Source of the DNA: Euprymna scolopes
Taxonomy: Eukaryota
Assembly (NCBI GenBank): GCA_053919585.1
Contig: JBSSHM010000258.1
Direction: 5' to 3' (one strand)
Length of the DNA: 64,000 nucleotides
The notes under the pieces were generated by a model. The model saw only the letters and a list, made by a program, of their open reading frames with translations. It was not told the DNA's origin and ran no database searches. Position numbers and translations under genes: made by a program. Shown here one piece after another: positions 6,980-12,075 of the stretch (position 1 is the stretch's first letter; every line of letters starts with the position of its first letter).

Positions 6980-7287
6980 ATCTAAAGAGTATTATTGTGT
7001 TTATTGTGATTCAAGCTATTTTATACAAAGGCAAAGATGCAAAATTTGTCTGGTAAAAGGTTGTAAAAATCGTGTACATATTCAATAAAAGCAACAAACA
7101 AAAGAGAGAACACGATTGATTAAAGCCTGAAATGATTATACCCTCAGTTTTTCAAGAATGCTACAAAATTAAAAACAGTACAAAGCAATAAGCAAAAATA
7201 GTGGCATTGCATAGCAAAATTATTCATCCCTATCACTTTACTCTTCTCCACAGGGATAAAAAATTAGGAAATAGGCTTTGGATTTGT

Positions 7288-7395
7288 TTATGGAATGGTT
7301 ACATCTAAGGTAACGGGGTCAGATTTACCCAAGTGGTTCATGGCATAAAGAGTAAATGTATATGTTCCTGCTCCTCCTAATGGGGTGGTGCACAT
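7288..7395 (-). pseudogene. Diverged fragment of the lipoprotein C-terminus (35 codons), copy 1
   Basis: Translates MCTTPLGGAGTYTFTLYAMNHLGKSDPVTLDVTIP*, homologous to ..NPLGGAGTYTFSVYAINHLGKAPKESITVVIP of the adjacent gene. Confidence 0.8.
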
Positions 7396-7483
7396 TCTCA
7401 AAGTCTCTGTAATAAATGGACAGTCCTTATGTTAGTTGATTATAGGTTAGTAAATATACTATATAAATATAAGCGATTTTCTC

Positions 7484-8656
7484 TTAAAATTTTCCTTCTG
7501 GAATCACGACAGTAATACTTTCTTTTGGTGCTTTGCCTAGATGATTGATGGCATAAACGCTGAAGGTGTATGTACCTGCTCCACCTAATGGATTGGTACG
7601 CACGTAAAGAGGAGCTTTATAAAAATCATCGCTATCTAATAAATGTAAAGTTTGTTTTCCATGTACTTTTGTTGAACTATTAAAGGTATTTTTCCTACCG
7701 ACACTATGCATTTGTGGAAATCCAGTGATGGTTTCATATTCAATGACATAGTATTGTGTATTCGGATCAATTCCTGTCCATTCTAATTCCACGGATTTGT
7801 CTGAATTGTAGCGGATAATTTTTAAACTGTTATCTGTAATACTGTCCTTCGGTGCCGTGGTAAAAGGCAAAAGGTGTGCTCGCATTATATTTCCCGTTAA
7901 TACGACTTCTATTTGTACTCTAAATGATTTTAAAGTAGAGTTGAATATAGATCCAAAATTCATGTTCCCACCAATTTCTCTTTTTGATGAAGGTCCTGGT
8001 CCATAAATATTCCACGGATCATGAATGCTATTATAAAATTGAATGTATAAGGCAGTATTATCTGAATATGCAATCTTATCCTCTTTATTAAGTATTTGGG
8101 TTCTACCAAGTGGTATCTCTTGGTTAAATACAATGTCCAAAATAGCCTCTTGCCTACCAGGAGGGTAAGTTGATTTCCCATTAATAACTGGAATGACTTC
8201 TATGGAATTCCAATCAAAGCGATCTGCTGTGCGTGTATTATCAGTTTTGACTGTGTAGGTGGCTGTATCAGATACTCCTAAGGAGTTATTATTTTTATCA
8301 AAGGCTTCTATAGTAAATTTATAGATGCCTTGTCGAACACCGATAATGTGATATCTACGACTAAAAAATCCCGTCATGGTGGGTACTTTATCTGAGTTAA
8401 TGTTGTAGTAAGAGACTTTAGCTGTTGGATTAGTCATTGTTTTTGCAGTAGTCCAGTTAGCAAATTTTTCCCATTCAATCCGCACATTGCCATGGCTAGT
8501 GGGTTCAAATATTTTCATGTATGAGGGGATGGAATTAGGATTAGGATTCTTATTTGAAACTGAATCATCAGAGGATGATGGACCACAGCCTTGAATAAAC
8601 AAAGCTAGAAATAACACTAAAGAGAATAGGGTAAAAGAGGTTATTTTTTTCATCAT
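7484..8656 (-). CDS. Surface lipoprotein with FN3/Ig-like domains, copy A (390 aa)
   Basis: Lipobox FIQG-C24, Ser/Asn/Pro linker, FN3-like patterns (VRIEW..YKFTIEAFD; VELEWT..YYVIEY..YTFSVYAIN); domain call inferred. Confidence 0.75.
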   Translation of the reverse strand: MMKKITSFTLFSLVLFLALFIQGCGPSSSDDSVSNKNPNPNSIPSYMKIFEPTSHGNVRIEWEKFANWTTAKTMTNPTAKVSYYNINSDKVPTMTGFFSRRYHIIGVRQGIYKFTIEAFDKNNNSLGVSDTATYTVKTDNTRTADRFDWNSIEVIPVINGKSTYPPGRQEAILDIVFNQEIPLGRTQILNKEDKIAYSDNTALYIQFYNSIHDPWNIYGPGPSSKREIGGNMNFGSIFNSTLKSFRVQIEVVLTGNIMRAHLLPFTTAPKDSITDNSLKIIRYNSDKSVELEWTGIDPNTQYYVIEYETITGFPQMHSVGRKNTFNSSTKVHGKQTLHLLDSDDFYKAPLYVRTNPLGGAGTYTFSVYAINHLGKAPKESITVVIPEGKF

Positions 8657-8766
8657 TTTTTGTATTTCAATCCTACATATATCTAGTTTAATACTATGTT
8701 AGTTGATTGTATCACTTTACTCTTCTCCACAGGGATAAAAAATTAGGAAATAGGCTTTGGATTTGT

Positions 8767-8874
8767 TTATGGAATGGTTACATCTAAGGTAACGGGGTCA
8801 GATTTACCCAAGTGGTTCATGGCATAAAGAGTAAATGTATATGTTCCTGCTCCTCCTAATGGGGTGGTGCACAT
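8767..8874 (-). pseudogene. Diverged fragment of the lipoprotein C-terminus, copy 2
   Basis: Identical to 7288-7395 at offset 1479. Confidence 0.8.
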
Positions 8875-8962
8875 TCTCAAAGTCTCTGTAATAAATGGAC
8901 AGTCCTTATGTTAGTTGATTATAGGTTAGTAAATATACTATATAAATATAAGCGATTTTCTC

Positions 8963-10147
8963 TTAAAATTTTCCTTCTGGAATCACGACAGTAATACTTT
9001 CTTTTGGTGCTTTGCCTAGATGATTGATGGCATAAACGCTGAAGGTGTATGTACCTGCTCCACCTAATGGATTGGTACGCACGTAAAGAGGAGCTTTATA
9101 AAAATCATCGCTATCTAATAAAAGTAAAGTTTGTTTTCCATGTACTTTTGTTGAACTATTAAAGGTATTTCTCCTACCGACACTATGCATTTGTGGAAAT
9201 CCAGTGATGGTTTCATATTCAATGACATAGTATTGTGTATTCGGATCAATTCCTGTCCATTCTAATTCCACGGATTTGTCTGAATTGTAGCGGATAATTT
9301 TTAAACTGTTATCTGTAATACTGTCCTTCGGTGCCGTGGTAAAAGGCAAAAGGTGTGCTCGCATTATATTTCCCGTTAATACGACTTCTATTTGTACTCT
9401 AAATGATTTTAAAGTAGAGTTGAATACAAATCCAAAACTTATGTCCCCACCAATTTCTCTTTTTGATGAAGGTCCTGGTCCATAAATATTCCACGGATTA
9501 TAAACGCCATTATAAAATTCAATGTATGTGCCAGTATTATTTGAATATGAAATCGTATCCTCTTTATTAGTTCTAGTAGCTTTATTAAGTATTTGGGTTC
9601 TACCAAGTGGTATCTCTTGGTTAAATACAATGTCCAAAATAGCCTCTTGCCTACCAGGAGGTCTAGTTGATTTCCCATTAATAACTGGAATGACTTCTAT
9701 GGAATTCCAATCAAAGCGATCTGCTGTGCGTGTATTATCAGTTTTGACTGTGTAGGTGGCTGTATCAGATACTCCTAAGGAGTTATTATTTTTATCAAAG
9801 GCTTCTATAGTAAATTTATAGATGCCTTGTCGAACACCGATAATGTGATATCTACGACTAAAAAATCCCGTCATGGTGGGTACTTTATCTGAGTTAATGT
9901 TGTAGTAAGAGACTTTAGCTGTTGGATTAGTCATTGTTTTTGCAGTAGTCCAGTTAGCAAATTTTTCCCATTCAATCCGCACATTGCCATGGCTAGTGGG
10001 TTCAAATATTTTCATGTATGAGGGGATGGGATTAGGATTCTTATTTGAAACTGAATCATCAGAGGATGATGGACCACAGCCTTGAATAAACAAAGCTAGA
10101 AATAACACTAAAGAGAATAGGGTAAAAGAGGTTATTTTTTTCATCAT
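8963..10147 (-). CDS. Surface lipoprotein with FN3/Ig-like domains, copy B (394 aa)
   Basis: Near-identical paralog of 7484-8656. Confidence 0.75.
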   Translation of the reverse strand: MMKKITSFTLFSLVLFLALFIQGCGPSSSDDSVSNKNPNPIPSYMKIFEPTSHGNVRIEWEKFANWTTAKTMTNPTAKVSYYNINSDKVPTMTGFFSRRYHIIGVRQGIYKFTIEAFDKNNNSLGVSDTATYTVKTDNTRTADRFDWNSIEVIPVINGKSTRPPGRQEAILDIVFNQEIPLGRTQILNKATRTNKEDTISYSNNTGTYIEFYNGVYNPWNIYGPGPSSKREIGGDISFGFVFNSTLKSFRVQIEVVLTGNIMRAHLLPFTTAPKDSITDNSLKIIRYNSDKSVELEWTGIDPNTQYYVIEYETITGFPQMHSVGRRNTFNSSTKVHGKQTLLLLDSDDFYKAPLYVRTNPLGGAGTYTFSVYAINHLGKAPKESITVVIPEGKF

Positions 10148-10302
10148 TTTTTGTATTTCAATCCTACATATATCTAGTTTAATACTATGTTAGTTAATTG
10201 TATCACTTTACTCTTCTCCACAGGGATAAAAAATTAGGGAATAGGCTTTGGATTTGTTTATGGAATTTTTACATCTAAGGTAACTTACATATGCATTAAC
10301 AT

Positions 10303-10885
10303 AGATTATCATTAATGTTAGTTTCTAAGTAAGATTATCATTAATGTTAGTTTCTAAGTAAGATTATCATTTGTTAGTTTCTAAGTAAGATTATCATTTG
10401 TTAGTTTCTAAGTAAGATTATCATTTGTTAGTTTCTAAGTAAGATTATCATTTGTTAGTTTCTAAGTAAGATTATCATTTGTTAGTTTCTAAGTAAGATT
10501 ATCATTTGTTAGTTTCTAAGTAAGATTATCATTTGTTAGTTTCTAAGTAAGATTATCATTTGTTAGTTTCTAAGTAAGATTATCATTTGTTAGTTTCTAA
10601 GTAAGATTATCATTTGTTAGTTTCTAAGTAAGATTATCATTTGTTAGTTTCTAAGTAAGATTATCATTTGTTAGTTTCTAAGTAAGATTATCATTTGTTA
10701 GTTTCTAAGTAAGATTATCATTTGTTAGTTTCTAAGTAAGATTATCATTTGTTAGTTTCTAAGTAAGATTATCATTTGTTAGTTTCTAAGTAAGATTATC
10801 ATTTGTTAGTTTCTAAGTAAGATTATCGTTTGTTAGTTTCTAAGTAAGATTATCGTTTGTTAGTTTCTAAGTAAGATTATCGTTT
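10303..10885. repeat. 27-bp tandem array (agattatcatttgttagtttctaagta), 21 full units plus a partial
   Basis: 2 x 29-bp variant, 17 x consensus, 2 x cgttt variant plus partial; stop codons in all six frames. Confidence 0.97.
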
Positions 10886-10892
10886 TTTTGTA

Positions 10893-10926
10893 TAAATTCG
10901 TGATTACCATAATAATCACGAATTTA
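10893..10926. promoter_or_regulatory. Perfect 14-6-14 inverted repeat (operator or recombination-site-like)
   Basis: taaattcgtgatta-ccataa-taatcacgaattta; palindrome seen directly, function inferred. Confidence 0.5.
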
Positions 10927-11040
10927 ACTTTTATGTAAAATTAGGAGAAATTAGAGGATTCTTCTGGTTAATTTAACGACTTTTTAAAAATTTTGTTTTG
11001 TTATGTTCTTTTTTTTAAAAATCAATTGGAGTGGTTCGTT

Positions 11041-12075
11041 ATGATACCGAGTACAGCCTTATTTGTGATTGGCATTCAAGGAACAATGATAAGTTCCGAT
11101 GAGAAATATTGGTTACAACATCCGTTGACTGCTGGAGTTATTTTATTTGCTAGAAATTATGAAAGCCCTGAACAAATTCAATTGTTGATTCAGACATTAA
11201 GGAATACGGCAAAGCATGATATTCTTATTATGGTTGATCAAGAAGGTGGGCGAGTTCAACGTTTTATTAAAGGGTTTACCAAAATCCCTCCTATGGCTGA
11301 TTTAGGGGTGATTTATGATAAAAATCCTGAAAATGGACTTCTTTTTAGCACAGCTTTGGGTTATGTGTTGGCTTATGAAATTGCACAGTGTGATGTTGAT
11401 TTTAGCATTGCTCCTATGCTGGATGTGGAAACGTCTGTATCAAATAGTAATGTGATTGGGGATAGAGCATTTAGCAAGGATATTGGCAAAATTTTCCCAT
11501 TAGCCAAAGCATTTTATCAAGGAATGCGTGAGGCTGGAATGAGTGGAGTGGGTAAACATTTTCCCGGTCATGGACATGTTTCTGCTGATTCGCATGAATC
11601 TCTGCCAATTTATGATGGGGATTTTGCTAGTTTGGAGGAAAATGACCTGCCCCCTTTTAAAGATTTAATTCATGCAGGCATCCCTGCAATAATGCCTGCT
11701 CATATACTTTATTCTCAAGTTGACCCAGATTTTCCTGCGGGTTTTTCTACTATATGGTTGAATGAAATTTTACGCAAAAAGCTTAATTTTTCTGGTTGTA
11801 TTATTAGTGATGATTTGAATATGGCTGGCGCTTCTGCTTATGGAAATATGGCTAAACGTGTTGCTTTAGCTACAAGAAATTGTGATTTGATTTTGGTGAG
11901 CCATCCTCCTGAAGATATCAAGAAGGCATTTGAGAGTCAGATTCCTTGGGAGAATCCTTTGAGACAGAAAAGAATTAATGCATTGCGAAGAAATAAAGAA
12001 GCTCTTAGTGCTCAGCTGTATAAAGACAAGTTGAATTTACTTAAAAAGCATGCGATTGTTACTTCTATTTCATAA
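11041..12075 (+). CDS. nagZ: Beta-N-acetylhexosaminidase (GH3)
   Basis: VDQEGGRVQR, KHFPGHG..DSH, SDDLNMAG; ATG 11041 preferred over TTG 10993. Confidence 0.95.
   Translation: MIPSTALFVIGIQGTMISSDEKYWLQHPLTAGVILFARNYESPEQIQLLIQTLRNTAKHDILIMVDQEGGRVQRFIKGFTKIPPMADLGVIYDKNPENGLLFSTALGYVLAYEIAQCDVDFSIAPMLDVETSVSNSNVIGDRAFSKDIGKIFPLAKAFYQGMREAGMSGVGKHFPGHGHVSADSHESLPIYDGDFASLEENDLPPFKDLIHAGIPAIMPAHILYSQVDPDFPAGFSTIWLNEILRKKLNFSGCIISDDLNMAGASAYGNMAKRVALATRNCDLILVSHPPEDIKKAFESQIPWENPLRQKRINALRRNKEALSAQLYKDKLNLLKKHAIVTSIS

What the first reader, a model, noticed from the sequence alone, without database searches (positions are those of the whole stretch)
7288..8874. Hidden alternative C-terminus cassette downstream of each lipoprotein gene
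Seen: about 90 bp after each stop lies a 35-codon frame absent from the ORF track (7288-7395 and 8767-8874), PLGGAGTYTFTLYAMNHLGKSDPVTLDVTIP*. It is homologous to the gene's own end PLGGAGTYTFSVYAINHLGKAPKESITVVIPEGKF. Its core differences from the gene are largely synonymous, so it derives from a much older paralog than the A/B duplication. A third shorter variant (VTLDVKIP*) sits at 10258-10284. Inference: either a relic of a longer birth-and-death array or a silent donor that swaps C-termini by recombination at the PLGGAG homology.
Basis: partly seen in the sequence, partly recalled or inferred. Interest (0 to 1): 0.7.

Follow-up and report, generated by a model that had tools for sequence, protein, structure and literature searches.

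The report
Leftover gene tail behind duplicated lipoprotein genes
The short "hidden" reading frame after each of two twin lipoprotein genes is real. It is most likely the broken-off tail of an older sister gene, copied along when the gene was duplicated, and not a working spare part for swapping protein ends.

Summary
On the minus strand, two tandem lipoprotein genes (8656-7484 and 10147-8963) are each followed, 82-88 nt after the stop, by an identical 37-codon frame (7401-7288 and 8880-8767). This frame is homologous to the gene's own last ~35 codons. A 27-nt third remnant lies at 10284-10258.

In the 20-codon core, 9 of 12 differing codons are synonymous (pS 0.75, pN 0.07). The parent was therefore an old paralog that stayed functional for a long time.

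The relic reading is supported:
- The fragment lacks about 340 codons, a ribosome-binding site and a signal peptide.
- It carries a 19-nt net deletion that shifts the frame just upstream of the core.
- It abuts a 17-nt promoter-like motif that also precedes each full gene.
- It has no full-length counterpart anywhere in the assembly.

The silent-donor reading is not supported:
- The longest exact match to the gene is 10 nt.
- There is no homology on the 3' side.
- There is only one cassette type.
- The cassette covers the conserved last two strands of an Fn3-like domain. The region where the twins actually differ is residues 164-237.
- Both genes keep the same end.

The 84-nt relic tails flank the gene as direct repeats and probably mediated the 1.48-kb duplication. 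No sequencing runs were listed, so population data could not be tested. Ordinary; low interest.

The parts
7484..8656 (-). Lipoprotein gene A (390 aa). It has a signal peptide with a Cys lipobox, an all-beta body and a C-terminal Fn3-like domain.
   Evidence: ORF. The C-terminal 129 aa match Pfam fn3 at E 0.0023, below the curated cut-off. The only outside homolog is P0001, collinear over the full length.
8963..10147 (-). Lipoprotein gene B (394 aa), the tandem twin of A.
   Evidence: 95% identity to A. 18 non-synonymous codon differences against 1 synonymous, clustered at residues 164-237.
7288..7401 (-). Cassette A: the intact-frame part of the relic (37 codons plus stop). It corresponds to gene residues ~352-386, the last two beta strands of the Fn3-like domain.
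   Evidence: Its Pfam sub-threshold hits all fall at the C-terminal end of beta-sandwich profiles. AF2 strands 361-371 and 379-385 (low confidence).
7402..7427 (-). Out-of-frame 5' part of relic A. It is homologous to gene codons ~341-346 but displaced by a 19-nt net deletion, with a TGA stop in that frame.
   Evidence: (family D7: offset 227 against 208 for the core). In one search, 16 of 2000 shuffles reached the observed collinear match.
7428..7444 (-). 17-nt motif TATAATCAACTAACATA at the 5' junction of relic A. Its first six bases are a -10-like hexamer, with TTTATA 17 nt upstream.
   Evidence: 4 sites in the window against 0.07 expected; 10-of-12 promoter-like match; 0 of 500 shuffles.
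7231..7287 (-). Tail shared by all three relic copies (the 3' flank of the old paralog). The tandem repeat ends at 7231/7230.
8767..8880 (-). Cassette B, identical to cassette A.
8907..8923 (-). 17-nt motif at the 5' junction of relic B.
8695..8711 (-). 17-nt motif (TACAAT variant, preceded by TGA as in an extended -10 promoter) upstream of gene A.
   Evidence: sequence.
10186..10202 (-). 17-nt motif (one mismatch) upstream of gene B.
10201..10284 (-). Remnant 3: the last 9 codons (VTLDVKIP*) plus the tail of a third relic copy, 96% identical to the A/B tails. There is a sharp breakpoint at 10284/10285 next to the 27-bp satellite.

Best explanation
The cassette is a dead 3' end of an older, diverged paralog of the lipoprotein gene that once lay just downstream of it.

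Proposed history (the steps are inferred):
1. One deletion removed everything from just after that paralog's promoter motif to about codon 341. This left the promoter-like motif, about 50 codons' worth of 3' coding sequence (now also frameshifted by a 19-nt net deletion) and the paralog's 3' flank.
2. A second, more severely truncated copy of the same 3' end lay upstream of the gene (remnant 3).
3. The gene was therefore flanked by 84-nt direct repeats. An unequal crossover in the last identical part of those repeats duplicated the 1.48-kb unit of gene plus relic. This gave today's order on the minus strand: remnant 3, gene B, cassette B, gene A, cassette A.

Shown directly: the homology, the truncation, the frameshift, the identity of the two copies, the repeat boundaries, and the absence of a full-length counterpart.

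The relic has no coding function. Its only likely effect is passive, as repeated DNA that lets the gene's copy number expand and contract.
For: Repeat structure:
- Unit boundaries are at 10284/10285 and 7231/7230, and the A and B relics are 100% identical over 413 nt.
- Remnant 3 differs from them at 3 of 84 nt, whereas genes A and B differ by only about 5 isolated events per 1.4 kb outside the variable patch. The flanking repeat therefore predates the A/B duplication.

Age and past function of the parent gene:
- Core divergence is pS 0.75 and pN 0.07.
- The cassette stops exactly where the only outside homolog, P0001, stops (...TVP against ...TIP), while genes A and B carry four extra residues.

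Decay:
- The fragment has no start, ribosome-binding site or signal peptide of the family, and the in-frame reading is blocked upstream.
- A 19-nt net deletion puts the collinear upstream homology in another frame (16 of 2000 shuffles).

Junction:
- The homology begins right after a 17-nt motif that otherwise occurs only upstream of each full gene (4 sites against 0.07 expected).

No living counterpart:
- Protein, DNA and profile searches of the whole 5.9-Gb assembly find only A, B and the relics.
Against: - The 31 codons that align with the gene end are still open and keep the family's conserved positions. Either the truncation is recent or something preserves them.
- The best promoter-like match of the region (10 of 12) sits right upstream of each cassette, so it may be transcribed.
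- The locus is clearly under diversifying pressure (18 non-synonymous against 1 synonymous difference between A and B). This raises the prior for some variation mechanism.
- No relatives or reads were available to show decay or polymorphism directly.
Confidence: 0.8

Rival explanations
1. Silent donor or switch. Recombination between the gene's PLGGAG...GK stretch and the downstream cassette replaces the gene's C-terminus. In practice this would be a 208-bp deletion that fuses the gene to the cassette, with the second gene copy keeping the original end. It would work like the rhs-main/rhs-orphan rearrangement in Salmonella.
For: - The cassette lies in the same orientation, directly downstream, with an open frame in register with the gene's end.
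- The locus is duplicated, which in the Rhs case is the step that allows a deletion-type switch without losing the original (PMC3967940).
- The A/B genes are under diversifying selection.
Against: - The homology is 71 nt at 75% with a longest exact run of 10 nt. The Rhs pair shares 522 bp at 95%, and bacterial RecA-dependent exchange needs a block of strict identity of up to about 30 bp (Shen and Huang 1986, as cited in PMC8918686).
- There is no homology 3' of the stops, so non-destructive gene conversion is not possible.
- There is only one cassette sequence.
- It covers structural strands that are identical in A and B, not the variable patch.
- Neither gene shows a mosaic or conversion tract.
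Confidence: 0.06
2. Displaced original end. The cassette is the resident gene's own former 3' end. It was pushed downstream when a foreign or paralogous 3' segment (the present gene end, its 38-nt spacer and the motif) recombined in. This is a different history for the same dead relic.
For: - The cassette ends like the distant homolog P0001, while the present gene end has a derived four-residue extension.
- Its position is immediately downstream and in the same orientation.
Against: - The junction carries the 17-nt motif found upstream of every full gene. This is what a deletion within a tandem gene pair would leave, whereas a replacement would need that motif to arrive by coincidence.
- Remnant 3 upstream of gene B shows that cassette-type ends also preceded the gene.
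Confidence: 0.08
3. Independent small gene or RNA. The relic promoter still drives a short transcript, and the 35-37-aa frame, or the RNA itself, has a function of its own.
For: A promoter-like site (TTTATA, 17 nt, TATAAT) lies 30-60 nt upstream, and the frame is intact in both copies.
Against: - Promoter-like sites are no more frequent here than in shuffles (20 against 20.9).
- There is no Shine-Dalgarno sequence at a usable distance from either start (sequence).
- The peptide amounts to two strands of a seven-strand sandwich and has no signal peptide.
- The region folds no better than shuffles (z 0.32).
- The two copies are identical only because the duplication is recent, so this says nothing about constraint.
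Confidence: 0.04

Closest known systems
Truncated pseudogene relics in tandem paralog arrays (birth-and-death evolution of surface-protein families)
   Same: A 5'-truncated, frameshifted fragment homologous to its functional neighbour. It is carried inside a recent tandem duplication, and an even shorter stump sits at the array edge.
   Different: Only the last ~50 codons survive. The surviving core is still open and shows no sign of neutral decay at non-synonymous sites.
Orphan or displaced C-terminal modules of Rhs and CdiA toxins (PMC3150448, PMC3967940)
   Same: A promoterless or 5'-less 3' fragment directly downstream of the full gene, in the same orientation, beginning with a stretch homologous to the main gene. 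Fusion by deletion is geometrically possible.
   Different: Rhs orphans share hundreds of bp at ~95% with the main gene and encode a whole alternative toxin domain plus an immunity gene. Here the homology is 71 nt at 75% and the 'alternative' part is about 11 residues of a beta strand, with no partner gene.
Silent-cassette gene conversion systems (Neisseria pilE/pilS, Borrelia vlsE/vls, Anaplasma msp2 pseudogenes); comparison from general knowledge
   Same: Truncated, non-expressed copies of part of a surface-protein gene near an expressed copy.
   Different: Those systems have many mutually different cassettes that cover the variable region and are framed by conserved sequence on both sides. 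Here there is one cassette type, it covers a conserved region, and it has homology on one side only.

Membership tests
Silent-cassette gene-conversion variation system | Several mutually divergent silent cassettes | tested here: not met
   Two identical copies plus a 27-nt stump. Nothing else was found in the assembly.
Silent-cassette gene-conversion variation system | Cassettes cover the variable part of the expressed gene | tested here: not met
   The A/B differences lie at residues 164-237, with two isolated differences at 322 and 338. The cassette's in-frame part covers ~352-386 and the whole relic ~341-386, a stretch that is identical in A and B.
Silent-cassette gene-conversion variation system | Conserved homology on both sides of the exchanged segment | tested here: not met
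   Homology on the 5' side only: 71 nt, 75%, longest exact run 10 nt. The sequences 3' of the two stops are unrelated (150 of 500 shuffles do as well).
Silent-cassette gene-conversion variation system | Chimeric expressed alleles in populations | not testable with these tools
   No sequencing runs were listed, there were no metagenome matches and there are no close relatives. Within the window, neither gene is chimeric.
Rhs/CdiA-type orphan C-terminal module | 5'-truncated fragment directly downstream of the main gene, in the same orientation | tested here: met
Rhs/CdiA-type orphan C-terminal module | Long, near-identical homology block shared with the main gene, upstream of the variable part | tested here: not met
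   71 nt at 75%, against 522 bp at 95% in Salmonella LT2.
Rhs/CdiA-type orphan C-terminal module | The variable part is a self-contained domain with a cognate partner gene | tested here: not met
   The fragment equals the last two strands of an Fn3-like domain. No ORF follows it before the next gene.
Pseudogene relic of a paralog | Significant homology to a functional gene, but lacking its start and most of its length | tested here: met
   (E 8.5e-10).
Pseudogene relic of a paralog | Frame-disrupting lesion | tested here: met
   A 19-nt net deletion lies between the collinear upstream homology and the core, with a TGA in the upstream frame. The upstream homology rests on a 15-nt match with p about 0.008.
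Pseudogene relic of a paralog | Decay (stops, raised dN/dS) in relatives | not testable with these tools
   No relatives carry the locus.
Fn3-like bacterial lipoprotein (host gene family) | Signal peptide with a lipobox Cys, and an Fn3 domain above the Pfam threshold | tested here: inconclusive
   A hydrophobic leader followed by Gly-Cys is present in A, B and P0001. Pfam fn3 scores 18.6 bits against a cut-off of 25. The ESM atlas neighbours are Fn3 proteins at 0.89, a lead only. The AF2 models are poor.

The most novel reading that the evidence does not exclude
The relic 3' ends are kept because they work as portable direct repeats. They would drive expansion and contraction of a surface lipoprotein gene that is under strong diversifying selection. 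A rare microhomology-mediated 208-bp deletion could then fuse one gene copy to the ancestral-type C-terminus, giving a one-way C-terminal switch buffered by the duplicate copy.
Probability: 0.07. Interest if true: 0.45.

Novelty: new member of a known kind. Interest (0 to 1): 0.2.

Why it matters
The main value is bookkeeping. The frame should be annotated as a pseudogene fragment, not as a gene or a variation cassette.

It also records the history of an almost orphan lipoprotein family in an uncultured bacterium found in a squid assembly (the host is taken from earlier notes and was not tested here). The locus once held at least two deeply diverged paralogs, lost one, and then re-duplicated the survivor. 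The two copies of the survivor are now diverging only by amino-acid changes.

If the switch reading were true, it would extend Rhs-style orphan-module logic to a non-toxin surface protein. The sequence requirements for that are not met.

Tried and rejected
Searches that found nothing or could not run:
- Word-index protein search with gene A and with P0001: no relatives.
- Exhaustive HMMER search with gene A: one true full-length relative, P0001, a Logan singleton. The other two hits match repeats or single domains of long proteins.
Its cluster has no name or accession.
- Metagenome scans by protein and by a degenerate PLGGAGTYTF pattern: nothing.
- Synteny through NagZ: the best relative has 48% identity, so no close genome is available for comparison.
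- Sequencing runs: none was listed.

Structure:
- AF2 alone and with the 4-row alignment gave mean pLDDT 34 and 42. This is too poor for a fold search, which I therefore skipped.

Ideas tested and rejected:
- The 38-55 nt spacer after the gene stop is degraded coding sequence: no better than shuffles.
- The stretch between the motif and the core derives from the gene's 5'UTR, which would make a 'mini-gene' with its own start: rejected, since 1900 of 2000 shuffles did as well.
- The 17-nt motif marks other loci of this bacterium: the extra hits lie on other contigs of the assembly (nearly all low-numbered ones with coordinates in the tens of megabases, plus one on C288). They number 33 in all, about twice the 17 hits of the reversed-pattern control, and were not examined further.
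- A terminator between gene and cassette: no minus-strand candidate was found, and the fold is unremarkable.

Full report
**What is there**

The window is a 35% G+C bacterial contig. It is contig C173 of a 5.9-Gb, 925-contig assembly. Earlier notes of this scan call the host a squid; I did not test that.

Between rnfA (6979-6398, minus) and nagZ (10993-12075, plus) lie two tandem genes on the minus strand. Gene B is 10147-8963 (394 aa) and gene A is 8656-7484 (390 aa). Both begin with a hydrophobic leader ending in Gly-Cys, as lipoproteins do.

After each stop comes the following, reading along the minus strand:
- a 38-nt spacer;
- a 17-nt motif (7444-7428 and 8923-8907);
- a 37-codon open frame (7401-7288 and 8880-8767) ending ...DVTIP;
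- a 57-nt tail.

A third piece at 10284-10201 holds only the last nine codons (VTLDVKIP, stop) and the same tail.

**Is the likeness real**

Yes.
- The cassette matches the gene's 3' end at 75% over 71 nt.
- The six-frame search of the whole assembly gives E 5.6e-5 with the protein and 8.5e-10 with a family profile.
- In the 20 ungapped codons from PLGGAG to GK, twelve codons differ, nine of them synonymously. This gives pS 0.75 and pN 0.07.

Synonymous sites are saturated while the protein core is kept. The parent of the cassette therefore diverged long ago and spent nearly all that time as a working gene.

The two cassettes and their flanks, by contrast, are identical over 413 nt (7231-7643 vs 8710-9122).

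**What the fragment corresponds to**

- The C-terminal 129 residues of gene A match Pfam fn3 below threshold (E 0.0023, 18.6 bits against a cut-off of 25).
- The cassette alone gives four weak hits, and all fall at the C-terminal end of beta-sandwich profiles (InlK_D3, Y_Y_Y, fn3_3, PKD).
- ESM-atlas neighbours are Fn3 proteins at 0.89, which is only a lead.
- AF2 models were poor (pLDDT 34 and 42). The better one places seven strands in residues 277-385, and the cassette covers the last two (361-371 and 379-385).

A peptide of two strands, with no signal sequence, is not expected to fold or be exported on its own. That last point is inference.

**The family**

The word-index search found nothing. 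The exhaustive search of 1.84 billion representatives found one true relative, P0001. It is 331 aa, has a lipoprotein-type leader, and is collinear over its full length (24% identity, E 1.1e-15 library-wide). P0001 is a singleton from a Logan assembly.

P0001 ends ...LTLTVP, exactly where the cassette ends ...LDVTIP. Genes A and B run four residues further. The cassette therefore carries the family's ordinary C-terminus, and the living genes carry a derived one.

**Signs of death**

- In the cassette's frame a stop lies 47 codons above its end.
- The gene's preceding codons (about 341-346) have a collinear match just upstream of the cassette. That match is at an offset of 227 nt rather than 208 nt, a 19-nt net deletion that changes the frame, and a TGA follows in that frame. 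Against the 88 nt of gene that precede the core, only 16 of 2000 shuffles reach this match.
- Immediately upstream of it the homology to the gene stops and the 17-nt motif begins.

**The junction motif**

The motif TAYAATCAACTAACATA occurs four times in the window against 0.07 expected. It occurs once upstream of each full gene (8711-8695 and 10202-10186) and once at the 5' edge of each relic.

Its first six bases are -10-like. At the relics a TTTATA lies 17 nt upstream, which is the best promoter-like match of the region at 10 of 12. At the genes it is preceded by TGA, as in an extended -10 promoter (read from the sequence). The number of promoter-like sites in the region is not above chance, so this part stays inference.

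The simplest reading is that each family member had this motif in its promoter. A single deletion then removed the old paralog from just after the motif to about codon 341.

I tested the alternative that the stretch after the motif is the gene's 5'UTR, which would make a mini-gene with its own start. It failed: 1900 of 2000 shuffles did as well. The spacer after the gene's stop is not degraded coding sequence either.

**How the array arose**

- The repeat runs from 10284 to 7231, about 2.05 units of 1479-1497 bp.
- Remnant 3 differs from the A/B tails at 3 of 84 nt. Genes A and B differ by about five isolated events in 1.4 kb outside their variable patch, and the two relics not at all.
- The gene was therefore already flanked by two copies of the old paralog's 3' end before it was duplicated.
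- An unequal crossover in the last ~38 identical bases of those 84-nt repeats yields exactly the present order. This step is inferred.
- The upstream breakpoint, 10284/10285, abuts the degenerate first units of a 21-copy 27-bp satellite.

**Why not a donor cassette**

1. The longest exact match between cassette and gene is 10 nt. RecA-dependent exchange in bacteria needs a block of strict identity of up to about 30 bp (Shen and Huang 1986, as cited in PMC8918686). In the best-studied case of a gene fusing to a downstream orphan end, Salmonella rhs, the partners share 522 bp at 95% (PMC3967940).
2. The sequences after the two stops are unrelated. Only a deletion-type fusion is possible, not a reversible conversion.
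3. There is one cassette sequence, and no other family member anywhere in the assembly.
4. The twins differ by 18 non-synonymous codon changes against one synonymous, plus two indels, almost all in residues 164-237. The cassette covers a stretch in which they are identical.
5. Neither gene shows a cassette-type base in its last 160 nt.

**What could not be tested**

- No sequencing runs were listed for this stretch, so chimeric junctions and copy-number variants remain unexamined.
- Two metagenome scans found nothing.
- The nearest NagZ in the species-level genome set is 48% identical, so no relative can show whether the cassette decays.

The open state of the 31 aligned codons and the promoter-like site upstream keep a small probability for a switch or a small expressed product.

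**Verdict**

The feature is real and correctly described. It is an ordinary pseudogene fragment, mildly informative about the history of a fast-evolving orphan lipoprotein locus.

Noticed in passing
window 7484-10147 (residues 164-237 of the two proteins): Genes A and B differ at 19 aligned codons. Eighteen differences are non-synonymous, and the single synonymous one sits beside a 6-nt indel. Sixteen of the changes, plus an 18-nt indel, fall in residues 164-237. This pattern points to diversifying selection or to conversion from an unseen source. It is the subject of another finding of this scan.
   Followed up: partly
window 7428-7444, 8695-8711, 8907-8923, 10186-10202 (minus strand): A 17-nt motif with a -10-like first hexamer precedes each gene and each relic (4 sites against 0.07 expected). 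The 27-bp satellite unit contains a similar AACTAACA core.
   Followed up: partly
window 10303-10885: A 21.4-copy, 99% perfect 27-bp tandem repeat lies between gene B and nagZ. Its degenerate first units abut the breakpoint of remnant 3.
   Followed up: no
window 10893-10926 (plus strand): A 14-pair inverted repeat followed by a T-rich run lies right after the satellite and before nagZ. It is terminator-like.
   Followed up: no
window 7215-7262 (minus strand): A hairpin forms between the relic tail and the first unique bases after the array, followed by TAATTTT. It exists only after cassette A and could be the terminator for the whole array.
   Followed up: no
P0001 (Logan singleton, 331 aa): P0001 is the only full-length relative of the lipoprotein among 1.84 billion representatives. 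It is shorter in the middle region where A and B vary.
   Followed up: partly
window 11041-12072 (nagZ): The best match among 185,579 species genomes is 48% identical (betaproteobacterial and Burkholderiales MAGs). The bacterium has no close sequenced relative in that set.
   Followed up: no
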